Shown in pieces: positions 9,001-51,774 of a stretch of DNA of 64,000 bases. The stretch's first letter is position 1; every line of letters starts with the position of its first letter. Both the position numbers and the translations under genes were made by a program. The notes below the pieces were generated by a model. It was not told the DNA's origin, made no database searches, and saw only the letters and a program-made list of their open reading frames with translations. Source of the DNA: Macrostomum lignano (Eukaryota); the NCBI GenBank assembly GCA_002269645.1, contig NIVC01001783.1, positions 1-64,000 on the forward strand, given 5' to 3'.

Positions 9001-12000
9001 TGTAGTGGTGACTGTGTCAGTGACACACCAACAACACACCCAGGATGCATTGGTGACTGTGTCAGTGACACACCAACAACACATCCAGGATGTAGTGGTG
9101 ACTGTGTCAGTGACACACCAACAACACACCAGGATGCATTGGTGACTGTGTCAGTGACACACCAACACACACCAGGATGCATTGGTGACTGTGTCAGTGA
9201 CACACCAACAACACATCCAGGATGTAGTGGTGACTGTGTCAGTGACACACCAACAACACATCCAGGATGCATTGGTGACTGTGTCAGTGACACACCAACA
9301 ACACACCCAGGATGCATTGGTGACTGTGTCAGTGACACACCAACAACACACCCAGGATGCATTGGTGACTGTGTCAGTGACACACCAACAACACACCAGG
9401 ATGCATTGGTGACTGTGTCAGTGACACACCAACAACACACCAGGATGCATTGGTGACTGTGTCAGTGACACACCAACAACACACCCAGGATGCATTGGTG
9501 ACTGTGTCAGTGACACACCAACAACACACCCAGGATGCATTGGTGACTGTGTCAGTGACACACCAACAACACACCCAGGATGCATTGGTGACTGTGTCAG
9601 TGACACACCAACACACACCCAGGATGCATTGGTGACTGTGTCAGTGACACACCACAACACACCAGGATGCATTGGTGACTGTGTCAGTGACACACCAACA
9701 ACACACCCAGGATGCATTGGTGACTGTGTCAGTGACACACCAACAACACACCCAGGATGCATTGGTGACTGTGTCAGTGACACACCAACAACACACCCAG
9801 GATGCATTGGTGACTGTGTCAGTGACACACCAACAACACCCAGGATGCATTGGTGACTGTGTCAGTGACACACCAACAACACACCCAGGATGCATTGGTG
9901 ACTGTGTCAGTGACACACCAACAACACATCCAGGATGTAGTGGTGACTGTGTCAGTGACACACCAACAACACATCCAGGATGTATTGGTGACTGTGTCAG
10001 TGACACACCAACAACACACCAGGATGCATTGGTGACTGTGTCAGTGACACACCAACAACACACCCAGGATGCATTGGTGACTGTGTCAGTGACACACCAA
10101 CAACACATCCAGGATGCATTGGTGACTGTGTCAGTGACACACCAACAACACCCAGGATGCATTGGTGACTGTGTCAGTGACACACAACACACAGGATGCA
10201 TTGGTGACTGTGTCAGTGACACACCAACAACACACCCAGGATGCATTGGTGACTGTGTCAGTGACACACCAACAACACACCCAGGATGCATTGGTGACTG
10301 TGTCAGTGACACACCAACAACACACCCAGGATGCATTGGTGACTGTGTCAGTGACACACCAACAACACACCCAGGATGCATTGGTGACTGTGTCAGTGAC
10401 ACACCAACAACACACCAGGATGCATTGGTGACTGTGTCAGTGACACCAACAACACACCCAGGATGCATTGGTGACTGTGTCAGTGACACACCAACACACA
10501 CCAGGATGCATTGGTGACTGTGTCAGTGACACACCAACAACACACCCAGGATGCATTGGTGACTGTGTCAGTGACACACCAACAACACACCAGGATGCAT
10601 TGGTGACTGTGTCAGTGACACACCAACAACACACCAGGATGCATTGGTGACTGTGTCAGTGACACACCAACAACACCCAGGATGCATTGGTGACTGTGTC
10701 AGTGACACAACAACACACCCAGGATGCATTGGTGACTGTGTCAGTGACACACCAACAACACACCCAGGATGCATTGGTGACTGTGTCAGTGACACACAAC
10801 ACACACCCAGGATGCATTGGTGACTGTGTCAGTGACACACCAACACACACCCAGGATGCATTGGTGACTGTGTCAGTGACACACCAACAACACACCCAGG
10901 ATGCATTGGTGACTGTGTCAGTGACACACCAACAACACATCCAGGATGCATTGGTGACTGTGTCAGTGACACACCAACAGCACACCCAGGATGCATTGGT
11001 GACTGTGTCAGTGACACACCAACAACACACCCAGGATGCATTGGTGACTGTGTCAGTGACACACCAACAACACACCCAGGATGTGGTGACTGTGTCAGTG
11101 ACACACCAACACACACCAGGATGCATTGGTGACTGTGTCAGTGACACACCAACAACACACCCAGGATGCATTGGTGACTGTGTCAGTGACACACCAACAA
11201 CACCCAGGATGCATTGGTGACTGTGTCAGTGACACACCAACAACACACCAGGATGCATTGGTGACTGTGTCAGTGACACACCAACAACACACCCAGGATG
11301 CATTGGTGACTGTGTCAGTGACACACCAACAACACACCCAGGATGCATTGGTGACTGTGTCAGTGACACACAACAACACACCCAGGATGCTGGTGACTGT
11401 GTCAGTGACACACCAAACACACCAGGATGCATTGGTGACTGTGTCAGTGACACACCAACAACACACCAGGATGCATTGGTGACTGTGTCAGTGACACACC
11501 AACAACACACCCAGGATGCATTGGTGACTGTGTCAGTGACACACCAACAACACACCAGGATGCATTGGTGACTGTGTCAGTGACACACCAACACACACCC
11601 AGGATGCATTGGTGACTGTGTCAGTGACACACCAACAACACACCAGGATGCATTGGTGACTGTGTCAGTGACACACCAACAACACCCAGGATGCATTGGT
11701 GACTGTGTCAGTGACACACCAACAACACACCAGGATGCATTGGTGACTGTGTCAGTGACACACCAACAACACATCCAGGATGCATTGGTGACTGTGTCAG
11801 TGACACACCAACAGCACACCCAGGATGCATTGGTGACTGTGTCAGTGACACACCAACAACACACCCAGGATGCATTGGTGACTGTGTCAGTGACACACCA
11901 ACAACACATCCAGGATGTAGTGGTGACTGTGTCAGTGACACACCAACAACACATCCAGGATGTAGTGGTGACTGTGTCAGTGACACACCAACAACACATC

Positions 12001-13632
12001 CAGGATGTAGTGGTGACTGTGTCAGTGACACACCAACAACACACCCAGGATGCAGTGGTGACTGTGTCAGTGACACACCAACAACACATCCAGGATGTAG
12101 TGGTGACTGTGTCAGTGACACACCAACAGCACACCCAGGATGCATTGGTGACTGTGTCAGTACAACAACACATCCAGGATGTAGTGGTGACTGTGTCAGT
12201 AACACACAGGATGCATTGGTGACTGTGTCAGTGACACACCACACAACAACCCAGGATGCATTGGTGACTGTGTCAGTGACACACCAACAACACACCCAGG
12301 ATGCATTGGTGACTGTGTCAGTGACACACCAACAACACACCCAGGATGCATTGGTGACTGTGTCAGTGACACACCAACACACACCCAGGATGCATTGGTG
12401 ACTGTGTCAGTGACACACCAACAACACACCCAGGATGCATTGGTGACTGTGTCAGTGACACACAGGATGCATTGGTGACTGTGTCAGTGACACACCAACA
12501 GCACACCAGGATGCATTGGTGACTGTGTCAGTGACACACCAACAGCACACCAGGATGCATTGGTGACTGTGTCAGTGACACACCAACAGCACACCCAGGA
12601 TGCATTGGTGACTGTGTCAGTGACACACCAACAGCACACCCAGGATGCATTGGTGACTGTGTCAGTGACACACCAACACACACCCAGGATGCATTGGTGA
12701 CTGTGTCAGTGACACACCAACAGCACACCCAGGATGCATTGGTGACTGTGTCAGTGACACACCAACAACACACCCAGGATGCATTGGTGACTGTGTCAGT
12801 GACACACCAGCACACCAACCGGATGCATTGGTGACTGTGTCAGTGACACACCAACAACACACCCAGGATGCATTGGTGACTGTGTCAGTGACACACCAAC
12901 AGCACACCAGGATGCATTGGTGACTGTGTCAGTGACACACCAACAACACACCCAGGATGCATTGGTGACTGTGTCAGTGACACACCAACAACACACCCAG
13001 GATGCATTGGTGACTGTGTCAGTGACACACCAACAGCAAACCCAGGATGCATTGGTGACTGTGTCAGTGACACACCAACAACACACCCAGGATGCATTGG
13101 TGACTGTGTCAGTGACACACCAACACACACCCAGGATGCATTGGTGACTGTGTCAGTGACACACCAACAGCACACCCAGGATGCATTGGTGACTGTGTCA
13201 GTGACACACCAACAGCACACCCAGGATGCATTGGTGACTGTGTCAGTGACACACCAACAGCACACCCAGGATGCATTGGTGACTGTGTCAGTGACACACC
13301 AACAGCACACCCAGGATGCATTGGTGACTGTGTCAGTGACACACCAACAGCAAACCCAGGATGCATTGGTGACTGTTTCAGTGACACACCAGCAGCACAC
13401 CCAGGATGCATTGGTGACTGTGTCAGTGACACCCCAACAGCACACTCGGGATGTATTGGAGACTGTGTCAGTGACACACCAACAACACACCCAGGATGTA
13501 TTGGAGACTGTGTCAGTGACACACCAACAACACACCCAGGATGTAGTGGTGACTGTGTCAGTGACACACCAACAACACACCCAGGATGTAGTGGTGACTG
13601 TGTCACTCAGGAGGTATCGGTGAATGTGTCAG
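1..13632. repeat. 45-bp satellite array (~300 units, runs off the left edge); consensus GGATGCATTGGTGACTGTGTCAGTGACACACCAACAACACACCCA
   Basis: Directly visible tandem periodicity of 43-45 bp with many single-base deletions. The last degenerate copy (ggtgaatgtgtcag) is at ~13619-13632. Confidence 0.98.
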
Positions 13633-15949: not shown

Positions 15950-16552
15950 GTGGGGGGCGCTTTTTCATCTGAATGGCGCCATTCCATTTTAGAGGGCGCC
16001 ATTTTCACTTTAGGGACACATTTTATTTTAGGGGGCGTATTCCATTTTAGGGGCGCCATTTCATATTAAGGGGCTCAACTTTATTTTAGGGAGTGCCATT
16101 TCATTTGACCATTTCAGCACCAGGGCGCCATTTCAGCTCCAGGGGTGCCGTTTCAGCATCAGGGGCGCCATTTCAGCATCAGGGGCGCCATTTCAGCACC
16201 AGGGGCGCCATTTCAGCACCAGTGGCGCCATTTCAGCCCCAGTGGCGCCATTTCAGCATCAGGGGCGCCATTTCAGCATCAGGGGCGCCATTTCAGCTTC
16301 AGGGGCGCCGTTTCAGCACCAGTGGCGCCATTTCAGCCCCAGTGGCGCCATTTCAGCCGCAGCGGCGCCATTTCAGCCCCAGTGGCGCCATTTCAGCCAC
16401 AGCGGCGCCGTTTCAGCACCAGGAGCGCCATTTCAGCCCCAGTGGCGCCATTTCAGCCCCAGTGGCGCCATTTCAGCCGCAGCGGCGCCGTTTTAGCACC
16501 AGGGGCGCCATTTCAGCTGCAGGGGCGCCGTTTCAGCCGCAGGGGCACCAAA
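15950..16552. repeat. 20-bp GGCGCC-core minisatellite (AGGGGCGCCATTTCAGCACC), degenerate at the left end
   Basis: Clean 20-bp period over ~16115-16550. Degenerate ggcgccattttaggg copies over 15950-16110. Confidence 0.93.
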
Positions 16553-24410: not shown

Positions 24411-24625
24411 CCGGGGCGTAGCCAGGATTTTTTTGTTTCGTGGGGCGCCATCATGGAGGCGCCATTGTGGGGCGCCATCGTGGTGGCGCCATAGTGGGGA
24501 TGACATCGTGAAGGCGCCAAGCAAAAGCACCAGAGGGCGCCAAGCACCAGAGGGCGCCAAGCACCAGAGGGCGCCGAGCACCAGAGGGCGCCAAGCACCA
24601 GAGGGCGCCGAGCACCAAGTTGCGC
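24411..24625. repeat. GGCGCC-core repeats (19-20-bp units, then 17-bp GAGGGCGCCAAGCACCA units) downstream of a GGGGCGTAGCCAGGATTTT terminus-like motif
   Basis: About 5 copies of the 17-mer at 24530-24620. The core is shared with the 16-kb and 27-kb arrays. Confidence 0.8.
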
Positions 24626-26916: not shown

Positions 26917-27660
26917 GGCGCCCCTTGGTGCTGGCGCCCCTTGGTGCTGGCGCCCCTTGGTGCTGGCGCCCCTTGGTGCTGGCGCCCCTTGGTGCTGGCG
27001 CCCCTTGGTGCTGGCGCCCCTTGGTGCTGGCGCCCCTTGGTGCTGGCGCCCCTTGGTGCTGGCGCCCCTTGGTGCTGGTGCCCCTTGGTGCTGGCGCCCC
27101 TTGGTGCTGGCGCCCCTTGGTGCTAAAGCCCCTTGGTGCTAAAGCCCCTTGGTGCTAAAGCCCCTTGGTGCTAAAGCCCCTTGGTGCTAAAGCCCCTTGG
27201 TGCTGGCGCCCCTTGGTGCTAAAGCCCCTTGGTGCTAAAGCCCCTTGGTGCTAAAGCCCCTTGGTGCTAAAGCCCCTTGGTGCTAAAGCCCCTTGGTGCT
27301 AAAGCCCCTTGGTGCTAAAGCCCCTTGGTGCTAAAGCCCCTTGGTGCTAAAGCCCCTTGGTGCTAAAGCCCCTTGGTGCTAAAGCCCCTTGGTGCTAAAG
27401 CCCCTTGGTGCTAAAGCCCCTTGGTGCTAAAGCCCCTTGGTGCTAAAGCCCCTTGGTGCTAAAGCCCCTTGGTGCTTCCTTAAAATGGCGCCTCTTGTCC
27501 CTAAAAATGCGCCTTCCCCTAAAATGGCGCTCCTCCCTTAAAAATGGCGCCCCATACCCTATAATGGTGCCCTTTCCCTAAAATGGGCCCGCTTTCTCTA
27601 AAATGGCGCTTCTCCCTTAAAGTGACGCTTCTCCCCTAAAATAACGCCCCTCCCTTTAGA
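26917..27660. repeat. 16-bp minisatellite (GGTGCTGGCGCCCCTT switching to GGTGCTAAAGCCCCTT), followed by a degenerate AAAATGGCGCC...CCCT zone
   Basis: 16-bp period over 26917-27476. Degenerate ~20-bp copies over 27480-27660. Confidence 0.95.
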
Positions 27661-28771: not shown

Positions 28772-30330
28772 GGGGTAGAGTAGAGTAGGGAAGGGTAGGG
28801 CAAGGTAGAGTAGAGTAGAGTGGGGTATAGTAGAGTAGAGTGGGGCAGAGAAAAGTAGAGTGGGGCAGAGTAGAGTAGACTGGGTAGAGTAGAGTAGAGT
28901 GGGGTAGAGTAGAGTGGGTAGAGCAGAGTAGAGTAGAGTGGGGCAGAGTAGAGTAGAGTGAGGCAGAGTAGAGTAGAGTGGGGCAGAGTAGAGTATAGTG
29001 GGGCAGAGTAGAGTAGACTGGGTAGAGTAGAGTAGAGTGGGGTAGAGTAGAGTGGGTAGAGCAGAGTAGAGTAGAGTGGGGTAGAGTAGAGTGGGTAGAG
29101 CAGAGTAGAGTAGAGTGGGGCAGAGTAGAGTAGAGTGGGTAGAGTAGAGTAGACTGGGTAGAGTAGAGTAGAGTGGGGTAGAGTAAAGTGGGTAGAGCAG
29201 AGTAGAGTAGAGTGGGGCAGAGTAGAGTAGAGTGGGGCAGAGTAGAGTAGAGTGGGTAGAGTAGAGTAGAGTGGGTAGAGTAGAGTAGAGTGGGGCAGAG
29301 TAGAGTAGAGTAGGGCAGAGTAGAGTAGAGTGGGGCAGAGTAGAGTGGGGTAGAGTAGAGTGGGGCAGAGTAGAGTAGAGTGAGGCAGAGTAGAGTAGAG
29401 TGGGGCAGAGTAGAGTAGAGTGGGGCAGAGTAGAGTGGAGTGGGGCAGAGTAGAGTAGAGTGGGGCAGAGTAGAGTAGAGTGTGTAGAGTAGAGTGGAGT
29501 GGGGCAGAGTAGAGTAGAGTGGGTAGAGTAGAGTAGAGTGGGTAGAGTAGAGTGGGGTAGAGTAGAGTGGGGCAGAGTAGAGTAGAGTGGGGCAGAGTAG
29601 AGTAGAGTGTGTAGAGTAGAGTAGAGTGGGGCAGAGTAGAGTAGAGTGGGGCAGAGTAGAGTAGAGTGGGTAGAGTAGAGTAGAGTGGGGCAGAGTAGAG
29701 TAGAGTGGGTAGAGTAGAGTGGGGTAGAGTAGAGTGGGGCAGAGTAGAGTAGAGTGGGGCAGAGTAGAGTAGAGTGTGTAGAGTAGAGTAGAGTGGGGCA
29801 GAGTAGAGTAGAGTGGGGCAGAGTAGAGTAGAGTGGGTAGAGTAGAGTGGGGTAGAGTAGAGTGGGGCAGAGTAGAGTAGAGTGGGGCAGAGTAGAGTAG
29901 AGTGGGTAGAGTAGAGTGGGGTAGAGTAGAGTGGGGCAGAGTAGAGTAGAGTGGGGCAGAGTAGAGTAGAGTGGGGCAGAGTAGAGTAGAGTGGGTAGAG
30001 TAGAGTAGAGTGGGGCAGAGTAGAGTAGAGTGGGTAGAGTAGAGTGGGGCAGAGTAGAGTAGAGTGGGGCAGAGTAGAGTAGAGTGTGTAGAGTAGAGTA
30101 GAGTGGGGCAGAGTAGAGTAGAGTGGGGCAGAGTAGAGTAGAGTGGGTAGAGTAGAGTGGGGTAGAGTAGAGTGGGGCAGAGTAGAGTAGAGTGGGGCAG
30201 AGTAGAGTAGAGTGGGCAGAGTAGAGTAGAGTGGGGCAGAGTAGAGTAGAGTGGGTAGAGTAGAGTAGAGTGGGGCAGAGTAGAGTAGAGTGGGTAGAGT
30301 AGAGTAGAGTACAGTAGGGCAGAGTAAAGT
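28772..30330. repeat. (AGAGT)n pentamer satellite with a 20-bp GGGGCAGAGTAGAGTAGAGT superunit
   Basis: Direct reading. The ORFs here are YSTL-type repeat artefacts. Confidence 0.97.
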
Positions 30331-30902
30331 AGCATGAAAAACCAAATGCAAAAACCATAGATATGAGAAATCTGCTCAAACGGCGACAATACCAATCAGG
30401 CTTAGCCAAAAATCAAATCATAACCAAATGAGCACAGAGAAATAGCAGGATATTCTATAGCATTTTTATATTACAATAAAACATCTGTGAGGAAAGCCAG
30501 CCCAGTGCAGAGGAAGAAATGGGGGAAGCACAGAAATTCAATACCAACTCTGATTGCCATTTTCATTTTTAACCTTCCCCACTTGGGCAATTCACTATTC
30601 AAACTCGTGTCTCTCTGTGACCCTCGGTGCGAAAATCATATATTCCATAATTCTGTCTCTTTATTCGATTGTACGGGACAGATTTTTTTTAATACGCTCC
30701 GCCTCGCCTTAGAGTAGAGAGAGACAAAAGTGTTGTAATTGTCAACAACTTTTTTTTGAGGCCAGCTGACTCTTAAGTTGAGGGATTAGCCGTGAATGTT
30801 GAAGGCATTTCAGCAGAATCGAAAAGGGAGGCGAAACCTACTTAAAATGAGAGATTTTCGTTTTAAAAAGAGGGCGAGAAAAAATTGACTACCGAGGGGT
30901 TG

Positions 30903-31115
30903 GAGTAGAGTAGAGTAAAGTAGAGTAGAGTAGGGTAGAGTAGAGTACAGTAGAGTAGAGTAGAGTAGATTAGAGTAGAGTAGAGTAGAGTAGAGTAGAG
31001 TAGAGTAGAGTAGAGTAGATTAGAGTAGAGCAATGTAGAGTAGAGTAAAGTAGAGAAGTATAGAGTAGAGTAGAGTAGAGTAGAACAGAGTAGAGTATAG
31101 TAGAGTAGGGTAGAT
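30903..31115. repeat. (AGAGT)n pentamer array
   Basis: Direct reading of the sequence. Confidence 0.95.
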
Positions 31116-31899
31116 TGTGGCAGAGTAGTTTTATATACCAAGTACACTCCTTTTTTCTGCTAACAGTTAAAAACTGCTCAATTGCGCATGTTAGTTTTAA
31201 GCAAAAGCAGAAGCCACTGATCCATTTGTCTGCCTTGCACAATAAAACCCCGCCTTCCAAAATCTCGCCGGTCTTAGTTGTTTAATTAATTAAAATCGGG
31301 ACTGAGCTCACCAGACCTGCCGTTTGGCAGTCGTTTATAGAATTTGATAGCTGAGCCTCCGCACCCCCAGCCTGTCTAAAAATAGGAGCAGATCAATAAA
31401 AACAGACAAATGCAATTAATGCCCGAGCCAGAGTGCCTAGGTTTGCATTACAGAACAGTTTCTGGGTAGAAATGCAATCGATTTGATTTTTGTCGTGTTC
31501 AATGAATTTGTTTTAGTGCGTTTTTTGTTTTAAACGATCGTTAAATTAGTTAATGTGCGAGTAAGTTCATGAGTGAGTTTCTGAGTGAGTCCGTAAGTGA
31601 GTTTATGAGTGAGTTCATGAGTGAGTTCATGAGTGAGTTCATGAGTGAATTCATGAGTGAGTTCATGAGTGAGTTCATGAGTAAGTTCATGAGTGAGTTC
31701 ATGAGTGAGTTCATGAGTGAGTTTCTGAGTGAGCTCATGAGTGAGCTCATGAGTGAGTTCATGAGTGAGTTCATGAGTAAGTTCATGAGTGAGTTTCTGA
31801 GTGAGTTCATGAGTGAGTTCATGAGTAAGTTCATGAGTGAGTTTCTGAGTGAGTTCATGAGTGAGTTCATGAGTGAGTTCATGAGTGAGTTCATAAGTG

Positions 31900-32054
31900 A
31901 ATAAATAAAGCTTAAGATCAACATTTATGGCGAAAACCAACGCGTTTCAACCCACTAGGGCCGTCGTCAGGGTATATTCTGCTAAATTTTCGCCATAAAT
32001 GTTGATCTTAAGCTTTATTTATTTGCTATTAATTAAGCGAGCAACTCTACCACA
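31900..32054. mobile_element. ~150-bp foldback insertion (perfect 37-bp inverted repeat around the hammerhead motif); probably a Penelope-like pLTR/retrozyme remnant
   Basis: 31900-31936 is the exact reverse complement of 31987-32023. gttcataagtga occurs on both sides of the insert (31889-31900 and 32055-32066). Confidence 0.6.
31936..31973 (-). ncRNA. Minimal type I hammerhead ribozyme motif of the kind associated with Penelope-like elements
   Basis: The minus strand reads acc-CUGACGA-C-GGCCC-UAGU-GGGUU-GAAA-C-GC-GU-U-ggu. It has both core boxes, stem II with two G-U pairs, a palindromic ACGCGU stem III, a GUU triad and a short stem I. Activity is not shown. Confidence 0.65.
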
Positions 32055-33309
32055 GTTCATAAGTGAGTTCATGAGTGAGTTCATGAGTGAGTTCATAAGT
32101 GAATTCATGAGTGAGTTCATGAGTGAGTTCATGAGTAAGTTCATGAGTGAGTTCATGAGTGAGTTCATGAGTGAGTTCATAAGTGAGTTCATGAGTGAGT
32201 TCATAAGTGAGTTCATGAGTGAGTTCATGAGTGAGTTCATGAGTGAGTTCATGAGTGAGTTCATGAGTGAGTTCATGAGTGAGTTCATGAGTGAGTTCAT
32301 GAGTGAGTTCATGAGTGAGTTCATAAGTGAGTTCATGAGTGAGTTCATGAGTAAGTTCATGAGTGAGTTTCTGAGTGAGTTCATGAGTGAGTTCATGAGT
32401 GAGTTCATGAGTGAGTTCATGAGTGAGTTCATGAGTGAGTTTCTGAGTGAGTTCATGAGTGAGTTCATGAGTGAGTTCATGAGTGAGTTCATGAGTGAGT
32501 TCATGAGTGAGTTCATGAGTGAGTTCGTGAGTGAGTTCATGAGTGAGTTCATGAGTGAGTTCATGAGTGAGTTCATGAGTGAGTTCATCGGTGAGAACCG
32601 CCTCAGCTAACTCCCTGTCAAGCGCTTTTCTACGCCATCATCGGGAGTCTGCGACCCCCCCCCCACATCAACCACATCCCCCACCGCGCCCGCAATTACA
32701 AGGTCGGCATATCAAAGGCGAGCACCAACCCCCTCACCCCAAGCAGTATCGGATTTCATCTTTTAGAAGCAGTTGGACGCAACTCAGAGTTTGAGTCGAT
32801 TGGAACAAGAAAGAGTGACGTAGAACTCAGCTTTGTTGTGGGTTTTGTACACTGGCCAACCGCCAGTTTTCAGAGAGCCTCCTAAAGGCCTTTGTTGACC
32901 GCTCATGCCCTGTCGTCTTCTGGCGGTTCCTTTCTTGTTGTTGATTTTTTGCAAGAGACTCTGCAGTCTCAACCCCTCCCCCGGTTTGCTTTGCCTCTCG
33001 TTCGCCAGAGTTCTTTTTCTTCCTCTGAAGAATTAAAAAAAACTTCGACTATTTTTCTGGTTGTTGATTACGTAATCAAAAGAAAATGTTAAGGAAATTC
33101 CCTTGAAGGAGAATCCTCGTGGCTATAGCCAAGCAGAGTAAGAAAACGATCGAACGCTAAATGGACAAAAACCTTCTAGTAGGAAATCTTCAGTTTTTTA
33201 GGAAGCCCCTCTTTGTTGTTGTGGCAGAGCGGGGCTTCAAGCGAAGCTGAGTTTGAAAATAGGGGAGGTGAACCTTGACCCCGGAGCTGACCAACAGTTT
33301 TTAATTAGT

Positions 33310-33668: not shown

Positions 33669-34104
33669 AAAAATAACTTTGTCCGGATTTTTCAAAGACA
33701 AATCATTATTATTGCTTTTAATTTCTAGAATTGAGTTGAAGCCATCTCATCATCGGCAGCAAGTTTCTCAAGCATCTTTGTAATTATTTAGGGGTTAAGG
33801 GGGGTTGAAAATAGAGGTAGGACTTTCAACGAATATTTGATATAAATATATCTTAATTTGCAGTTTCACAAGTGACAATAGCTTTTAATTACTGTGTTTA
33901 TATCTGCATAGATCATTTGCCAAATAATTGGCATATATGAACAAGTATGTAAACATGTAAGGCAAAGTATTTATGGAAATCCGGACTGCAAAATCCGAAG
34001 CGAATCTAGCCATGCTTTATAGCTGTGGATCTGAATGTTGACTTGTGTATTTATTGCCAGCCTTTACCGATGGTAATAACTAATCTTAGGTTTCAAGAAT
34101 AGGT

Positions 34105-34670
34105 AGAGTAGAATAGAATAGAGTAGATTAGAGTGGGGTAGAATCAAGTAGATCAGAGTGTTGAGTGGATTAGAATAGAGTAGAGCAGGGTGAGTGAGTG
34201 GAGTAGAGTGGGGTAGAGTAGAGTGAGTACAGTGGATTAGAGTGGGGTAGAGAAGGTTAGAGTAAAGTAAAGTACAGTAGAGTAAAGTAGAGTAGATGGA
34301 GTAGAGTGAGTAGAGTGAGTAGAGTGGAGTAGAGTGAGTAGAGTGAGTAGAGTAGAGTAGAGTGAGTAGAGTGAGTAGAGTGGAGTAGAGTGAGTAGAGT
34401 GGAGTAGAGTAGAGTAGAGTGAGTAGAGTGAGTAGAGTAGAGTAGAGTGAGTAGAGTAGAGTAGAGTGAGTAGAGTAGAGTAGAGTGAGTAGAGTAGAGT
34501 AGAGTGAGTAGAGTAGAGTAGAGTGAGTAGAGTAGAGTAGAGTGAGTAGAGTGAGTAGAGTGAGTAGAGTGAGTAGAGTGAGTAGAGTAGAGTAGAGTGA
34601 GTAGAGTGAGTAGAGTGAGTAGAGTGGATGGAGTAGAGTAGAGTGAGTAGAGTGGGCAGATCAGTAGAGC
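34105..34670. repeat. AGAGT/AGAGTGAGT purine-rich array
   Basis: Direct reading of the sequence. Confidence 0.94.
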
Positions 34671-36527: not shown

Positions 36528-36743
36528 GTGAGTTCTGACGGCTGCCTGCGAGAGATTGGGAAATGGCATTCCGCTGACTCCTGATAGTGTACGCCTGGCA
36601 TGTACACTATCTGTGCCTTGGGGGCTGGCCCTCATGGCCCTCAGGACCAACCCACAAAGGCACAGAGTCAGGACCGCTGTACACTCTGTGTGAGCGCGTG
36701 TTCTGTGTTCGGAACGACTGTCGCCCCCTCCCTCGTCCTCCAG

Positions 36744-39256
36744 TCCTGCTGCCGCCCTCCATCACGCGCCAGCCGGCCGCCGAGACGCCGTTCATCCCGG
36801 GGGAGCCGATCCGGCTGGACTGCGATGCTTCACCGCCTGGCAGCGTCGAGTTCGCCTGGCTGCGCAACCGGGAGACGCTCAGCCTGCGGGACGGCCGTCG
36901 GCTAGCTGGCGGCGCTCTGATCATTGAGTCGCCGACGTTAGCGGACGAAGGCGTCTACCAGTGCCTCGCTGGCAACCGCTTCGGCTGGGCGGCCTCCCGG
37001 GTGTCGCAGGTCCGTCAGGCCGTTCTGCAGCCGTTCCCCAACGCCAGGAAGCCTCCGATTGAGAAACTGGTAGGTGACAGCCTGCGCATCCCATGCGAGT
37101 CGCCAGTCTCGTACCCGACCGCCACAGTGCTGTGGTACAAGACTGACGATCTGACCAACCGGCTGAGCACCCTGCCGATGTCCAACCGGATTGCCATTCA
37201 TCCTACTGACGGTTCGCTTCTATTCGCCAATCTGCTCCTGGAAGACGGCAACGCTGGCTACCAATGCGGTGCTAGAAACGATTTTGTCAGGCGAACAGTT
37301 GAAAGTCGAGCGCACCGACTCACCGTTCGACAGGGCGGCGACAGTTCGACAAAGCGACGACCGGCCGAGCTGATGGCCCAGAGCGACTCGCGACCGCAGC
37401 TGCTGGCCAACAGCACCGGCGATCTGTTCTGCTTCTTCAGCGGCTACCCGACCCCGCAGATCCGATGGCGTCGACCGGTTGCTGACGGCTCGGACCAGCT
37501 GCTCGAGGCCGGCACCCGCCTTCAGCTGCTCTCCGTTCGGACGAAAACTCACGCCGGAACCTTCGAGTGCTTCGCTGTGAACGGCGGCAGCAGCGCACCG
37601 GCCTCCGCTAAGTTTCAAGTAGCCGTCGTGTCGCCGCCCCGATGGCTCGATCGACCTGAAGGCGTCGCCCTGGCCGAGGGCGCGGCCAGGCACGAGTTCC
37701 GCTGCCGGGCCGAGCCGATGGAAGGCCATCCCAGCTGGTTCGTCAACGGCCGCCCGGTTCAGCCGATGAATCCTTCGGAGCCGCACCGGCTGATCTTCGA
37801 GAACCTGACGGCGGCCGACTCGGCCATGGTGCAGTGCAACTGCAGCAACTCGCACGGCTACATTCTGGCCAACGCGCACCTGAGCGTGCTCAACCAACCG
37901 CCAGTGTTCACAGAGCCGCCGCCGCCGGGCGGACTGAAGACCGCGGCCGGAGTTGCCAAGCTGGTCATCCCGTGTCGGACGTTCGCGGCGCCTAAACCGG
38001 ACATCTGGTGGAGCCGCGACGGTCAGCGGCTGGACGGGGACTCCGGCCACTACAGCCTGGAGCAGAACGGCGACCTAGTGATTCGTGACGTCCAGCTGTC
38101 CGACGCTGGCCGCTACAAATGCCTGGCCAGCAACCGGTTCGGCAGCAGCGAAGCAGAGTCCAGCCTGACTGTCCGCCAGCCCACCGAGATCCGCATCCCG
38201 CCGGAGTCGCAGACAGTTGTCGAAGGCGCCGAAGTTCGCCTCGCCTGCACGGCTGTCACGGACGTTGGCGAGGCTGGCAGCCTTCGGCTGACCTGGCTGA
38301 AGGACGAAAAGCTGGTTGACTTCGGCAGCCGGCCGGGTCTGCTGCACAGCGGTCAGCACGACGGCACTTTGGTGATCTCGCGGGCCCGACCGCAGGACAG
38401 CGGCGTCTACTCGTGCAACGCCAGCAACGGGCTGGACTATGACGTCAAGAGCGCCCGCCTAGTGGTCACGGGCCGGCCCGGCGCGCCCGCCGACCTACGA
38501 GTCGCCTGCGACACGCCGGCTGCCAAGGCGACGCTCCGGTGGACAGCCGGGCCGGACAATAACTCGCCGGTGCGGCGACACATTGTCGAGTTTGCGACGC
38601 AGTTCGACGATCACCTGTCGGGAGTCTGGCGCTCGGCCGAGTTGGCTTCGGCGGCGACAACGGCAAACTCAGCCACTGTCCGGCTTCGTCCGAATCTTTT
38701 ATATCGATTTCGAGTCCGAGCTGTGAACGACGTTGGGCCGGGCGACGCCTCCGAGGTTGTCGGCGCGCCGCCAAACTGTCGGGTGCCGCCCGACCGACCC
38801 GCCGTCAATCCCGACGGTCTCCGGGCGGAGGGCAGCCGGCCGCACAGCCTGACAGTCCAGTGGCAGCCGCTGTCACCGCTGGACTACGGAGCGGACGGCC
38901 TGGCGTATGTTCTGCAGCTGCGGTGCATCGACTGCGCTGGGACGCCGATTAACCGACCGTTCGAGAAGATCGTGTCGGATCCTAAAGTCGATCAAGTCGA
39001 CATTGTCGAACTGATCATAGACGGTCGCTCTTATCCGGTAGAAATTTACCGGCGCTATCTGGTGACGCTCGTTGCTAGGAACTCGCTGGGCGACTGTCGG
39101 GAGCGACCAGCTGAAGTTCTGGGTTATTCTGGGGAGCTGCAGCCCCTGGTGGCACCAAGCGACCTCCGGGTGGCCACGGAGTCCGCGGACGCCGTTGCGG
39201 AGAATTCGGCTGTGCTAGCTTGGTCGCTTGGCATCGACCCGACTGTGGACGATAGG
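36744..39256 (+). CDS. L1CAM: L1CAM/neuroglian-like protein, coding exon 2 (six Ig domains, FN3-1, FN3-2 and the start of FN3-3)
   Basis: Six C...W...C Ig repeats; Ig4 VQCNCSNSHGYILANAHLSV is typical of the L1 family. FN3 motifs include YRFRVRAVNDVGPG. Acceptor cctccag, donor AGG|GTGAGT (phase 0). The symbol is family-level; orthology is not established. Confidence 0.92.
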
Positions 39257-39309
39257 GTGAGTGAGGTTGCTTGCCTCGGGAATGCACTTTTTATTCAGGA
39301 ATCCGGAAA

Positions 39310-39600
39310 AATTTTTTAAGAATCCCAAAACTTTTTAAAGAATTCCCAAAACGTGTCTAGAAAATCATGAAACTTTCCCCAAAATACTGAAACTTGTCCA
39401 GGAATCTCAAAAAAATTTCATAAATCCCGAAACTTTTGCAAGAACCCTGATACTTCCTTAAGAATCTCAAAACAAACCTATTTAAGAGTTCTAAAACTTT
39501 TATAAGAATCCCGAAAAATTTATACATCTAGATCGTAGATCGTTAAATTTTTCAAGAATCTGCGAACATTTCCAAGAATCCAGTAGCTTTTACTGGAAGA
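39310..39600. repeat. Degenerate ~21-bp AT-rich repeat (aagaatccc..aaacttt) in L1-like intron 2
   Basis: Recurring aagaatcc and aaacttt motifs. Confidence 0.6.
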
Positions 39601-39642
39601 TTTGTAGTTTGAATTATTTACTCAGCTTGCTCAATTAATCAG

Positions 39643-40012
39643 CTACTCAGCTACTCAGCTACTCAGCTACTCAGCTACTCAGCTACTCAGCTACTCAGCT
39701 ACTCAATTACTCAGCTACTCAGCTACTAAGCTACTCAGCTACTAAGCTACTCAGCTACTCAATTACTCAGCTACTCAGCTACTCAGCTACTAAGCTACTC
39801 AGCTACTAAGCTACTCAGCTACTCAATTACTCAGCTACTCAGCTACTCAGCTACTCAATTACTCAGCTACTCAGCTACTCAGCTACTCAGCTACTAAGCT
39901 ACTCAGCTACTCAGCTACTCAGCTACTCAGCTACTCAATTACTCAGCTACTAAGCTACTCAGCTACTCAGCTACTTAGCTACTCAGCTACTCAGCTACTC
40001 AGCTACTCAGCT
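39643..40012. repeat. 8-bp minisatellite (TACTCAGC)n in L1-like intron 2
   Basis: Direct reading of the sequence. Confidence 0.96.
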
Positions 40013-40043: not shown

Positions 40044-41196
40044 GTCCGCGGTTTCTACCGCGGCTTCCGCATCGAGTGGTGCGCATGGAACTCCAGCGAG
40101 GCGGGCTGCGCAGCTGGTCTGAACCGGTCGCAGGACGTCATCTACCGGGAGGCGCCGGTTTCAGGCTCCTCTTCCGCTTCATCATCATCAGCAGCATCGT
40201 CTACATCGACCCTCTCGCTGCCGCTGCAGTTCAAGGAGCGGCTGTTCCGCCTTCCGGGAGACACGAGCATCCAAGCGTGGGTCCGCCTGCTCAACAAGCG
40301 CTACGCCGGCCCGCCCAGTGAGGCCATCGAGTTCCGCACTCTGGAGGGCACGCCAGGTCAAGTGAGCGAGTTTGTGCTCAGCCTGACAGGTGTTAATCAT
40401 TTGGAGTTCGGCTGGTCGCCGCCGCAGCAATGCAACGGCCGCTTGACTGGCTACCAGTTGGCCTACCAGGAGATCCGCGAACTGCTGCAGGCCGACATTG
40501 TCTACACGCCACCAATCAATGACCCGTCGCAACGTCGCGGTCTGATCGCTGGCCTGAAGCCGAACACCAACTATCGGGTGTACATCTACGCTCGAACAGC
40601 CAAAGGCAACGGTGAGCCAACGTTCCTGGACGTCAGGACGGCTCCGCCCAGCAGAGACTGGCGAGGCGGCGGACCGTTCACGGTAATCCCCGTCGGTGAC
40701 CGGGCGTTGAACGTCACCTACAACCCGGGCACCGGGTCGCGATCGATGTTCTATGTGCAGTACCGCGAGTTGCAGGATGCGAAGTCGCTGGAGCCAAAGC
40801 AGCACGAAGAGCAGCAGGAGCAGCAACAGCAACAGCAGCAGCAGCAGCAGCAGAAACAGCAGAAGCAACAGCAGCAGCAGCAGCCGGCCCCTCCGCCACC
40901 GCCAGCCTGGCTGGAGACCAAACGAGAGCTGCAGCGACGCTGGATTCTCATCGACAACTTGGCCAGGAACTCCTGGTACGAGGTGCGCGTCATCGCGTCC
41001 GAGGATGGCGCCGCGGCCGCCTCCTACACGGAGCCGGTGCGGGCGAGGACCGGGTCGAACCGGCGGCTTGGCGGCGGCCTGCTGGATGGCGCCGGTTCCA
41101 CCTGGCTGGTGTGCATGTCCCTCATCCTGCTGGTAGTGGCCGTGTTCCTCCTGTTCATGTGCTTCGTGCGGCGGCGGCGGGGACGGCCGGAGTACC
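40044..41196 (+). CDS. L1CAM: L1CAM/neuroglian-like protein, coding exon 3 (rest of FN3-3, FN3-4, FN3-5, TM helix, RRRR stop-transfer)
   Basis: Acceptor ccgctcag|GTC (phase 0), in frame with ORF 40362-41204. FN3 motif LKPNTNYRVYIYART; TM WLVCMSLILLVVAVFLLFMCFV; donor C|GTAAGT (phase 1). Confidence 0.9.
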
Positions 41197-41206
41197 GTAA
41201 GTGATG

Positions 41207-50380: not shown

Positions 50381-51774
50381 ATAATAGTAATAGAAGGCCG
50401 CCCGTCAGCGGCTGTACCAGCTTCAGGGCAGCATTTGCCGTGCCATCACAGGTGCGTACCCGTCCACCCCTTACGAGGGGCTGAACACTATCCTTAACCT
50501 ACCTCCGCTTCACCTATTTATTAGGGCGGAGGCTATGAAGTCTGCCTCCCGGCTTATCAGAGATAAAACGTTAAATAACGCGCCCTCTGGCTTTATGCCA
50601 ATGAAAACATTAATCCCGCATATGGACTTTGTCCGCCGCGACCTTAACAACATCCACATGGACCTGGGCAATGTGGATAGTCGACCTCCCGCCCTCAACA
50701 TCAGGAGGGGCTTCAAGACCGCCATCCCTGGCCGAGACAACATTCCGCTGGATGTCGGTGTGAACCGGCGCAGCCAGGGCATTCACTGCTTCACCGACGG
50801 CTCGCTGTTCAACGGCCGCGCTGGAGCGGGTATTGCCATTTTCCACGAGGGTAAGATGCTTCTCCAGGAAAGTCTGCACCTCGGTGAGAACACCTCAGTT
50901 TTCCAAGCTGAAATTTGCGCCATTGAGCAGTGTGCCCAGCAACTGTTTCAGGCGAACATTAATAATTTTGACATTAATTTCTACACTGATAGCCAAGCTG
51001 CTATTAAGGCCTTAACCACTGAGAATATCTCCGCTGCTACAGTATCTCAATGCCACCGCAGTGTGCAATCTCTCTCAGTCCTTAACAGGATTAGAATTAT
51101 CTGGACACCTGGTCACAGCAACATCCTGGGCAACGAGCTCGCGGACTCTCTCGCCAAGGAGGGCAGCAACCCAGACGGCAACCACCGTCTGATGAGGCTA
51201 CCCACCCCCAGGTCGCAAGTCACCCGCCATATCAACAGGTGGCTCCATCAGCAGCACCAGCTCCACTGGAACAGCTGCACCGAGTACAGGCAGAGCCGCT
51301 CTGCCATGCCTAACCTGAACAGGAAAGTCTCTGATTATCTGATTTCGCTTAACAAAACCGACCTCAGGGAGATGTGCATGGTCCTAACCGGCCACGGATT
51401 CTTCCAGAGACATATATCGTTGCAAACCGGTTGCCCTCCCACCTGTCCCTTCTGTGGCATAGGAGAGGAGACCGCGGAGCATCACGTCACCTTCTGCCCT
51501 TACTTCAACAAGGCGCGGCACAAATACCTCGGCCACCCCCAGCGGATGGACGAGCTGACCACCGCGGACAATATCCGAGACCTCCGCGCCTTCGTCCGGG
51601 ACTCCGGCCGGATGAGGGTCGCCGATGCCTCCACTGCGGACCTGCCGACTACTGGCGGGGACTGGGCGCACCCCCAAGGCTAATCCTTGTGCTCTTTTAC
51701 CTTGGGGTTGCGATAGGGGCCTCGCGGCCTATTCGCGGCGCCTGCGCCCCCCGTCAGTAGTAAGTAAGTAGTAA
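50381..51774 (+). mobile_element. 5'-truncated non-LTR retrotransposon (I/R1 group, LOA-like): RT thumb end, RNase H, CCHC-like knuckle and 3' tail
   Basis: The frame is open over 50394-51683. It has ITGAYPSTP...LNLPPLHL (post-RT thumb); [20 protein letters not shown] and [15 protein letters not shown] (RNase H); and LTGHG...[16 protein letters not shown] (TAG/TAAG)n tail follows, and the 13-bp TSD GTACATGGCAGCT is at 50368-50380 and 51775-51787. Confidence 0.93.

What the first reader, a model, noticed from the sequence alone, without database searches (positions are those of the whole stretch)
31900..32054. Hammerhead ribozyme motif caged in a perfect 37-bp foldback, inserted into a 12-bp minisatellite
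Seen in sequence: 31900-31936 and 31987-32023 are exact reverse complements. The 50-nt loop reads on the minus strand uuuagcagaauau-acc-CUGACGA-C-GGCCC-UAGU-GGGUU-GAAA-C-GC-GU-U-gg. That gives both hammerhead core boxes, a stem II, a palindromic ACGCGU stem III and a GUU site (predicted cut between 31939 and 31938). The variant unit gttcataagtga flanks both sides like a TSD. Established: Penelope-like elements and retrozymes carry minimal type I hammerheads with palindromic stem III that cleave as dimers, and their pLTRs are often partly inverted. Inference: this is a tiny (~150 bp) ORF-less ribozyme element. Its long inverted repeat could replace the weak 3-bp stem I and stabilise a monomeric fold, and the same hairpin could yield endo-siRNAs. 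A satellite-targeting mini-retroelement of this design may be undescribed.
Basis: partly seen in the sequence, partly recalled or inferred. Interest (0 to 1): 0.85.

Follow-up and report, generated by a model that had tools for sequence, protein, structure and literature searches.

The report
Truncated Penelope-like retroelement insertion with hammerhead
The 155-bp foldback with a hammerhead-like motif is real, but it is most likely the ordinary scar of a Penelope-like retrotransposon that inserted two very short, opposed copies of its 3' end into a minisatellite, not a new kind of mini ribozyme element.

Summary
A perfect 37-bp inverted repeat (31900-31936 / 31987-32023) encloses 50 nt that carry, on the minus strand, a complete minimal type I hammerhead. 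The insert interrupts a 12-bp satellite and is flanked by GTTCATAAGTGA on both sides. A descriptor built from published PLE hammerhead features hits the window only here (chance about 1e-4 per window) and recovers validated hammerheads in real Penelope-like elements (PLEs). The proposed novelty is not supported. The layout is TSD | 87-nt hammerhead-bearing copy | 37-nt inverted copy | 31-nt one-sided extension | TSD. Spider and beetle PLE insertions fetched as controls have the same layout: perfect inverted arms, a 28-33-nt tail only beside the short inverted copy, and 14-15-nt TSDs. This matches the published PLE mechanism, in which both target strands are cleaved and extended from two internal RT start sites. 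The monomer is not predicted to fold as a hammerhead; helix III needs a dimer. Caveats: no parent element or second copy could be found because the source genome is not in any searchable collection; G10.1-C11.1 is replaced by G-U; a Poseidon-clade covariance model scores the motif at noise level. Verdict: a new member of a known kind, of low to moderate interest.

The parts
31559..32588 (.). Host minisatellite (GAGTGAGTTCAT)n, the target of the insertion; it continues in the same phase on both sides of the insert
   Evidence: TRF: period 12, 85 copies; sequence read
31889..31900 (+). Left copy of the putative target-site duplication GTTCATAAGTGA (11-13 nt; the boundary bases are ambiguous and the last A is shared with the arm)
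   Evidence: it is the only CATAAG variant unit in the left half of the array
31900..31986 (-). Longer, hammerhead-bearing 5'-truncated copy (87 nt, sense on the minus strand): 13 nt upstream, the min-HHR, then 39 nt downstream of the predicted cut. Its 3' end abuts the TSD with no tail
   Evidence: layout matches spider L007 and beetle L006
31936..31973 (-). Minimal type I hammerhead motif: ACC-CUGACGA-C-GGCCC-UAGU-GGGUU-GAA-ACGCGU-U^GGU; predicted cleavage between 31939 and 31938
   Evidence: Descriptor hit; coordinates; chance rate about 1e-4 per window; the same descriptor recovers PAc and other PLE HHRs
31900..31936 (-). Left arm of the foldback, which is the 3'-terminal 37 nt of the longer copy
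31987..32023 (+). Right arm of the foldback: the short inverted 5'-truncated copy (37 nt, sense on the plus strand), head-to-head with the longer copy. It contains an ATG at 31999 preceded by TAA
32024..32054 (+). 31-nt one-sided extension ('tail') beyond the 3' end of the short inverted copy. Its end is AC-rich (CAACTCTACCACA), and it is open in the ATG frame (MLILSFIYLLLIKRATLPQ)
   Evidence: comparators have 28- and 33-nt tails in the same position; the published tail is 30-40 bp (PMC8557442, PMC11167929)
32055..32066 (+). Right copy of the putative target-site duplication GTTCATAAGTGA

Best explanation
The insert is a dead-on-arrival insertion made by the reverse transcriptase/GIY-YIG endonuclease of a Penelope-like element (PLE). 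The template was the 3' region of a PLE RNA, or of a non-autonomous RNA that the PLE mobilises. The enzyme made a staggered break in the 12-bp satellite and primed reverse transcription on both strands from the two adjacent internal start sites typical of PLEs. One cDNA ran 87 nt, through the element's minimal hammerhead. The other started 31 nt further downstream (the tail) and stopped after 68 nt. Joining the two head-to-head produced a perfect 37-bp inverted repeat around a 50-nt unique centre, a 31-bp extension at one end only, and an 11-13-bp target-site duplication. The hammerhead is a passenger relic of the parent's pLTR/ORF-start region. On its own it cannot form helix III, so it should be inactive as a monomer. 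The fragment has no coding capacity and is probably immobile. Shown here: the anatomy, the motif and its rarity by chance, and the identical layout in real PLE insertions. Inferred: the dual-strand priming history, the existence of a parent family, and the inactivity.
For: (1) Motif: a descriptor taken from PMC4209133 (CUGANGA, 0-1 extra nt, helix II 4-8 bp, GAA, A...U palindrome, H17, helix I >=3 bp) hits the window once, at this locus. It gave 0 hits in 80 Mb of simulated strand, and the analytic bound is 1.2e-4 per window. (2) Positive controls: the same descriptor finds the experimentally validated PAc hammerhead with the cut after nt 29, as published. It also finds hammerheads at PLE units of a ladybird (4 in tandem), a spider, a goby and a metagenome contig, and nothing else in 68 kb. 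All have the 1-nt bulge, and most have a 3-bp helix I like the candidate. (3) Anatomy: real PLE loci have 99-100% identical inverted arms around a unique centre (L006 1031 nt, L007 76 nt, L008 up to 2244 nt). In spider and beetle the order is TSD (14-15 nt) | 28-33-nt tail | short inverted copy | long copy whose 3' end abuts the TSD, and arm end plus tail is colinear with contiguous PAc sequence. The window insert has the same order, with a 31-nt tail and an 11-13-nt TSD. (4) Geometry: from the cut to the two 3' ends is 39 and 70 nt here, against 56 and 90 nt in PAc and 55 nt in the spider. (5) Literature: PLE insertions are heavily 5'-truncated, often have an adjacent inverted truncated copy and a one-sided 30-40-bp tail, and favour micro-satellites (PMC8557442). 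The PAc enzyme cleaves and extends both strands from two internal RT start sites (PMC11167929). (6) Dimer-only folding, as published for min-HHRs (PMC4209133).
Against: No RT or GIY-YIG coding remnant exists in the window (tblastn with PAc protein). No second copy of any part of the insert was found in the window or in the metagenome, viral or prokaryote collections, so the parent family is unseen and covariation cannot be tested. The highly conserved G10.1-C11.1 pair is G-U here, and helix II is 5 bp with two wobbles rather than 6-8 bp. A covariance model trained on five Poseidon-clade PLE hammerheads scores the candidate at 7.5 bits, below the window's noise of 8.8 bits. Rfam finds no hammerhead, although it also misses all nine bona fide PLE hammerheads. 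A TSD equal to one satellite unit cannot be strictly distinguished from an insertion between two like units. Whether 32024-32054 continues the element is unverified.
Confidence: 0.7

Rival explanations
1. One reading: a discrete, propagating ~155-bp ORF-less foldback element (a non-autonomous mini-retroelement). Its inverted repeat is part of the element, extends helix I so the hammerhead works as a monomer, and it targets satellites.
For: The motif is real-looking. Geometrically the 37-bp stem continues helix I across a 13-nt bulge. Non-autonomous PLE derivatives exist (PMC8557442; bioRxiv 10.64898/2026.07.22.740005).
Against: It is single-copy in the window and absent from all collections searched. 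The monomer MFE is not a hammerhead, and helix III (ACGCGU) cannot close intramolecularly. The inverted repeat, one-sided 31-nt tail and TSD are exactly what PLE insertion itself generates, so no special element needs to be invoked.
Confidence: 0.07
2. A chance hammerhead-like motif inside an unrelated hairpin-forming insertion: a MITE or foldback DNA transposon, filler DNA from break repair with template switching, or a fragment of another repeat.
For: About 2 chance descriptor matches are expected per Gb of genome. The core deviates from consensus at 10.1-11.1. Neither Rfam nor the PLE-trained CM supports it. No PLE coding sequence lies nearby.
Against: The chance rate is about 1e-4 for this window. 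The motif lies at the position and orientation expected relative to the 3' ends and tail. The termini are not inverted repeats of each other and the right arm is 31 bp from the flank, unlike a MITE. The CM and Rfam negatives are weak, because both miss or barely score real PLE hammerheads.
Confidence: 0.13
3. A hairpin-RNA gene (miRNA or endo-siRNA precursor) in which the 37-bp stem is the functional part and the hammerhead resemblance is irrelevant.
For: The hairpin is very stable (-67 kcal/mol, z = -9.5). There are weak, generic matches to plant miRNA-precursor models (38 bits against a gathering score of 211).
Against: The Rfam scores are far below threshold and reflect any long hairpin. 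A perfect 37-bp stem with a 50-nt loop is unlike animal pre-miRNAs. There is no conservation or expression evidence. siRNA production would be a by-product compatible with the main explanation.
Confidence: 0.04
4. An assembly or read chimera artefact that created the foldback.
For: Perfect palindromic junctions can arise from library artefacts, and PLE inverted structures are known to trouble assemblies (PMC8557442).
Against: The unique non-satellite sequence, the asymmetric tail and the matching flanking units form a coherent biological structure identical to independent PLE insertions in other genomes. The arms do not resemble common sequencing adaptors (my own knowledge, not tested).
Confidence: 0.03

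Closest known systems
Head-to-head, 5'-truncated Penelope-like element insertions (e.g. the Uloborus diversus locus L007 and the Tenebrio molitor locus L006 fetched here; described in Craig et al. 2021, PMC8557442)
   Same: Perfect inverted arms around a unique centre; the longer copy's 3' end abuts the TSD; the short inverted copy is followed by a one-sided ~30-nt tail; the TSD is 11-15 nt; the hammerhead lies a few tens of nt upstream of the 3' end.
   Different: It is far more truncated (87 and 37 nt, against 2.1 kb and 76 nt in the spider). It has no coding sequence, no detectable sequence similarity to these Poseidon-clade elements, and it sits in a 12-bp minisatellite.
Poseidon_Ac (PAc) hammerhead and RT-initiation region (PMC11167929)
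   Same: A min-HHR with a 1-nt bulge after A9, a 3-bp helix I and a palindromic helix III. Two 3' ends lie about 31-34 nt apart downstream of the cut. Both target strands are used as primers.
   Different: PAc has AUG overlapping A9-U-G10.1, G10.1-C11.1, a 6-bp helix II with a 7-nt loop, and ACGU. Here the bulge is C, 10.1-11.1 is G-U, helix II is 5 bp with a 4-nt loop, helix III is ACGCGU, and the first ATG lies about 20 nt after the cut. The CM built from this clade gives only 7.5 bits.
Drosophila virilis-type PLE hammerhead variants (also reported in rotifers, shrimps and mosquitoes; Cervera & De la Pena 2014, PMC4209133)
   Same: [quoted passage not shown]
   Different: The comparison rests on the paper's description only, because no sequences were available to align. 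The D. virilis variant also has a bulge within helix II and a 6-bp helix II.
Animal non-LTR retrozymes (PMC7229834)
   Same: Type I hammerhead, non-coding, small size, TSDs longer than 4 bp, probable PLE dependence.
   Different: Retrozymes are tandem multimers of 150-450 bp with canonical hammerheads that have loop 1-loop 2 contacts and a real helix III. Here there is one minimal motif, no tandem copy and an inverted repeat.
LINE-1 twin-priming 5' inversions
   Same: Both involve two priming events on opposite strands and a head-to-head junction.
   Different: Twin priming inverts a different, upstream segment and makes no inverted repeat of the 3' end and no tail. The duplication of the same 3'-terminal 37 nt seen here is PLE-like (PMC8557442).

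Membership tests
Penelope-like element (insertion product) | Sequence continuity with a parent element encoding RT plus GIY-YIG endonuclease that shares this 3' end | not testable with these tools
   The source genome is not in any searchable collection: window proteins are not on record and the best homologue of a window gene is only 41% identical. DNA scans gave only chance hits.
Penelope-like element (insertion product) | RT / GIY-YIG coding sequence within the insert or nearby | tested here: not met
   No such ORF was found, and tblastn with the PAc protein found nothing in 64 kb. This is expected for a 155-bp, extremely 5'-truncated copy, so it limits the claim to 'product of PLE machinery'.
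Penelope-like element (insertion product) | Inverted 5'-truncated copy adjacent to the main copy, giving near-perfect inverted repeats | tested here: met
   37/37 complementary arms, head-to-head. The same is seen in L006, L007 and L008 at 99-100%.
Penelope-like element (insertion product) | 30-40-bp tail extension at one end only | tested here: met
   A 31-bp extension at 32024-32054 lies only beside the short inverted copy. It occupies the same position as the 28- and 33-nt tails in the spider and beetle. Its identity as downstream element sequence could not be tested.
Penelope-like element (insertion product) | Target-site duplication of variable, LINE-like length | tested here: inconclusive
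   GTTCATAAGTGA flanks both sides, and the variant unit is unique in the left half-array. However, its length equals one satellite unit, so insertion between two like units cannot be excluded.
PLE minimal hammerhead (Cervera & De la Pena 2014) | Core boxes CUGANGA and GAAA, helix II, short helix I, and U-H cleavage site in type I order | tested here: met
   Descriptor hit; coordinates; chance rate about 1e-4 per window; the descriptor was validated on PAc and four other PLE families.
PLE minimal hammerhead (Cervera & De la Pena 2014) | Unpaired nucleotide between A9 and 10.1 | tested here: met
   C at 31963. The controls all have U at this position.
PLE minimal hammerhead (Cervera & De la Pena 2014) | Highly conserved G10.1-C11.1 pair | tested here: not met
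   G10.1 (31962) faces U11.1 (31949), a wobble. All nine control hammerheads have G-C.
PLE minimal hammerhead (Cervera & De la Pena 2014) | Palindromic 15.2-16.2 / loop 3 (dimer-forming helix III) | tested here: met
   ACGCGU at 31945-31940. Cofolding forms the intermolecular helix only in the dimer.
PLE minimal hammerhead (Cervera & De la Pena 2014) | Membership of a multi-copy consensus family with covariation in the stems | not testable with these tools
   No second copy is available.
PLE minimal hammerhead (Cervera & De la Pena 2014) | Self-cleavage (as a dimer and/or protein-assisted) | not testable with these tools
   This needs an experiment. Folding only shows that the monomer prefers an inactive fold.
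Poseidon-clade PLE hammerhead (sequence and structure profile) | Significant score with a covariance model trained on PAc, ladybird, spider, goby and metagenome PLE hammerheads | tested here: not met
   7.5 bits in the correct register, below the window's noise of 8.8 bits. The model also gives a real Tenebrio PLE hammerhead only 16.9 bits, so it is narrow.
Rfam hammerhead families (RF00163, RF00008, RF02275-7) | Match at the gathering score or at a permissive E-value | tested here: inconclusive
   There is no hit at gathering or at E<=10 on 351 nt. The same library misses all nine bona fide PLE hammerheads at E<=5, so the negative is uninformative.
Animal non-LTR retrozyme | Tandem repeats (two or more units of 150-450 bp), each with a canonical type I hammerhead | tested here: not met
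   There is a single motif in the window, no tandem copy, and a minimal rather than canonical architecture (PMC7229834).
MITE / foldback DNA transposon | Terminal inverted repeats at both element ends, directly abutting the TSD | tested here: not met
   The left arm abuts the flank, but the right arm is 31 bp from it, and the two outer termini are not complementary.

The most novel reading that the evidence does not exclude
The short arm may be a run-off cDNA made on a hammerhead-cleaved template. Its inner end (31936/31987) lies only 2 nt from the predicted cleavage site (31939|31938). If insertions of this PLE family often end there, that would be a genomic footprint of in-vivo hammerhead cleavage of PLE RNA, something the PAc study looked for and did not find. 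A second reading that the evidence does not exclude is that the foldback, if transcribed, serves as a hairpin source of small RNAs against the parent element's RT-initiation/ORF-start region.
Probability: 0.1. Interest if true: 0.55.

Novelty: new member of a known kind. Interest (0 to 1): 0.25.

Why it matters
If the main reading is right, this is routine repeat annotation: one more dead PLE fragment. It is a compact illustration (155 bp) of the complete PLE insertion signature: dual-strand priming, a one-sided tail and a hammerhead next to the RT start sites. It also shows that a PLE family with a D. virilis-like palindromic helix III and a G-U closing pair exists in a poorly sampled, probably lophotrochozoan animal lineage. 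There are two practical lessons. Rfam's hammerhead models miss PLE min-HHRs entirely. And perfect foldbacks with a ~30-bp asymmetry inside satellites should be read as PLE scars before anything more exotic is proposed.

Tried and rejected
(1) Rfam at gathering and at E<=10 gave no hammerhead, only generic miRNA-hairpin matches. A control later showed Rfam also misses real PLE hammerheads, so I did not use this as evidence against. (2) The bare core boxes are at chance level, so I replaced them with a full descriptor. (3) I searched for other copies by window self-BLAST, a metagenome scan (2 hits, both 20-26-nt chance matches in high-GC bacterial contigs), viral contigs and prokaryote genomes. 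Nothing turned up. (4) I looked up window ORFs in the gene-position index to reach the source contig or other haplotypes; they are not on record. (5) I tried to identify the organism through the Ig/FnIII exon. The best matches were 41% (a Logan transcript) and 34% (a cestode neuroglian), so the species is absent from the collection and the taxon stays uncertain. (6) tRNA/SINE origin: ARAGORN found no tRNA, and the A/B-box resemblance seen by eye was not pursued. (7) A covariance model from five Poseidon-clade PLE hammerheads scored the candidate at 7.5 bits, not above noise. I report this as a failed clade-level membership test. (8) I looked for closer hammerhead variants in three more PLE loci (hoverfly, Anticarsia x2) and found none. 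(9) I did not search the 19-aa peptide MLILSFIYLLLIKRATLPQ against the protein collection: it is too short for significance, and the species is evidently not in the collection. (10) The run-off-at-cleavage-site idea: arm ends in L006, L007 and L008 do not coincide with hammerhead cut sites, so I kept it only as a low-probability novel reading.

Full report
OBSERVATION. Positions 31900-31936 and 31987-32023 are 37-nt exact reverse complements separated by 50 nt. Neither arm recurs elsewhere in the window, even with 3 mismatches allowed, and none is expected by chance. It is the only strong inverted repeat in the 64 kb. As RNA, the region folds into a hairpin of -67 kcal/mol (z = -9.5 against shuffles). 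The ~155-bp insert (31900-32054) interrupts an 85-copy array of the 12-bp unit GAGTGAGTTCAT (31559-32588), which continues in phase on both sides. The variant unit GTTCATAAGTGA flanks it at 31889-31900 and 32055-32066. This CATAAG variant is otherwise absent from the left half of the array and occurs four more times on the right.

IS THE HAMMERHEAD MORE THAN CHANCE? The two core boxes alone are not: CUGANGA...GAAA occurs 4 times in the window against 3.7 expected. Rfam reports no hammerhead at gathering score or at E<=10 on a 351-nt stretch.

The literature on Penelope-like elements (PLEs) changes the assessment. Cervera & De la Pena (PMC4209133) describe PLE 'min-HHRs' with these features:
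- an unpaired nucleotide between A9 and 10.1;
- a short helix I (2-5 bp);
- a long helix II;
- no real helix III, but a palindromic 15.2-16.2 (plus a 2-nt palindromic insertion in the D. virilis, rotifer, shrimp and mosquito variants), so that they act as dimers.

I encoded these features as a descriptor. It hits the window exactly once, at this locus. It gave no hit in 80 Mb of Markov-simulated strand. Its analytic upper bound is 1.2e-4 matches per window, about 2 per Gb.

The descriptor is valid. It finds the experimentally characterised Poseidon_Ac (PAc) hammerhead at the tandem-unit junction with the cut after nt 29, as published. In 68 kb of real PLE loci fetched through the PAc protein, it hits only PLE hammerheads: four in tandem in a ladybird, and others in a spider, a goby (with the published U3-A8 covariant core) and a metagenome contig.

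Rfam misses all nine of these bona fide motifs even at E<=5, so its silence on the candidate carries no weight.

Two tests count against the candidate. The conserved G10.1-C11.1 pair is G-U. A covariance model trained only on the five Poseidon-clade hammerheads aligns the candidate in the right register but gives 7.5 bits, below the window's noise of 8.8 bits. That model is narrow: it gives a real Tenebrio PLE hammerhead only 16.9 bits.

WHAT THE INSERT IS. That asymmetry is the key.

Craig et al. (PMC8557442) describe typical PLE insertions as heavily 5'-truncated, often with an inverted 5'-truncated copy immediately adjacent that forms inverted repeats. They carry a 30-40-bp 'tail' at only one end and show a microsatellite insertion bias. 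The in-vitro study of PAc (PMC11167929) shows that the enzyme cleaves and extends both target strands. It also shows that reverse transcription starts at two adjacent internal sites, that the tail is the sequence between them, and that the hammerhead lies just upstream.

I checked this anatomy directly in the control loci:
- All three loci have 99-100% identical inverted arms around a unique centre: Tenebrio 1031 nt, spider 76 nt, goby up to 2244 nt.
- In the spider the order is TSD TTAATGATAAATGT | 28-nt tail | 76-nt inverted copy | 2.1-kb copy ending 55 nt after the hammerhead cut | TSD.
- In the beetle the order is TSD TACAGAATTATTCTA | ~33-nt tail | 1031-nt inverted copy | longer copy | TSD.
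- In both, arm end plus tail is colinear with the contiguous PAc consensus, and the tail falls on PAc nt ~87-115, the published tail.

Read with the minus strand as sense, the window insert has the same order: TSD | 87-nt copy (13 nt + hammerhead + 39 nt) whose 3' end abuts the TSD | 37-nt inverted copy | 31-nt tail | TSD. The distances from the cut to the two 3' ends (39 and 70 nt) parallel those of PAc (56 and 90 nt).

An ATG preceded by a stop codon lies about 20 nt after the cut, and its frame stays open through the tail. This is compatible with a PLE ORF start near the hammerhead but is not significant on its own.

MECHANISM. The best-supported account is a dead-on-arrival PLE insertion. 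A staggered break was made in the satellite, both 3' ends primed cDNA synthesis on the PLE RNA's 3' region (one from the tail-proximal start site), both cDNAs aborted very early, and the two were joined head-to-head. The anatomy and its identity with real PLE insertions are shown. The priming history is inferred.

The hammerhead is a passenger. ViennaRNA predicts that the monomer pairs CUGACG with CGCGUUGG, which is an inactive fold. Stem II plus an intermolecular (A)ACGCGU(U) helix form only in the dimer. This agrees with the published inactivity of single min-HHRs.

WHAT COULD NOT BE DONE. The parent element was not found. The window has no RT/GIY-YIG remnant. The species is absent from the searchable collections: window proteins are not on record, and the best homologue of the neuroglian-like exon is 41% identical, with a cestode next at 34%. 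DNA scans of metagenome, viral and prokaryote collections returned only two chance matches. Family membership, stem covariation, insertion preference and cleavage therefore remain untested.

RIVALS. A propagating 155-bp foldback element (0.07) is not excluded but is unnecessary. A chance motif in an unrelated hairpin insertion (0.13) is made unlikely by the descriptor statistics and the position-correct anatomy, and a MITE is contradicted by the 31-bp asymmetry. A hairpin-RNA gene (0.04) and an assembly artefact (0.03) have little support.

One coincidence is worth noting. The short arm ends 2 nt from the predicted cleavage site, as a run-off cDNA on cleaved RNA would. The three comparator loci show no such relation, so I rate this reading low (0.1).

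VERDICT. The feature is most likely (about 0.7) a severely truncated, head-to-head PLE insertion carrying a variant min-HHR. That makes it a new member of a known kind and of low to moderate interest (0.25).

Noticed in passing
window 31936/31987 vs 31939|31938: The inner end of the short inverted copy lies 2 nt downstream of the predicted hammerhead cleavage site, as expected for a cDNA that ran off a cleaved template. Comparator PLE insertions (L006, L007, L008) do not show arm ends at cut sites.
   Followed up: partly
L005, L007, L008, L012 (control PLE loci): Rfam 15 hammerhead models detect none of nine bona fide PLE minimal hammerheads even at E<=5. PLE min-HHRs are effectively invisible to standard Rfam annotation.
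   Followed up: yes
L006 4935-4973 (+) and 1803-1841 (-): The Tenebrio PLE copy carries CCGAAGA instead of CUGANGA (U4 to C) in both perfect arms, which is probably an inactive core. The goby locus L008 carries the U3-A8 covariant core (UUGAAAA) in three copies.
   Followed up: partly
window 1-13605: A 13.6-kb array of a 45-bp unit (308 copies, 94% matches) occupies the first fifth of the window. Overall, roughly half the window is minisatellite arrays of many unrelated units.
   Followed up: no
window 15975-16550, 24438-24617, 26920-27654: GGCGCC-containing 16-20-bp satellites recur in both orientations (CCATTTCAGCACCAGGGGCG, against GCCCCTTGGTGCTAAA, which is roughly its reverse complement). 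This suggests one satellite family inverted about 10 kb apart.
   Followed up: no
window 28775-30332, 30903-31114, 34103-34669: GTAGA/GAGTA-type pentamer-derived arrays flank the host 12-bp satellite on both sides. The host unit GAGTGAGTTCAT may be related to them.
   Followed up: no
window 36587-39319 and 40362-41204 (+): Large exons of a neuroglian/L1CAM-like Ig/FnIII adhesion gene are separated by a (TACTCAGC)n array (39619-40012), with an (AGC)n poly-Q tract at 40798-40884. The closest database relatives are only 34-41% identical (a Logan transcript and the cestode Mesocestoides), so the source lineage is poorly sampled.
   Followed up: partly
window 50535-51683 (+): A 382-aa ORF with RNase H / RVT_3 domains, probably the 3' part of a LINE-like retrotransposon. 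It is unrelated to the PLE fragment.
   Followed up: no
window 31908-31917, 31940-31945, 32030-32037: The 155-bp insert contains HindIII/AflII (AAGCTTAAG), MluI (ACGCGT) and PacI (TTAATTAA) sites. This is probably coincidental (the palindromes follow from the AT-rich arms and helix III), but a vector or synthetic origin was not formally excluded.
   Followed up: no
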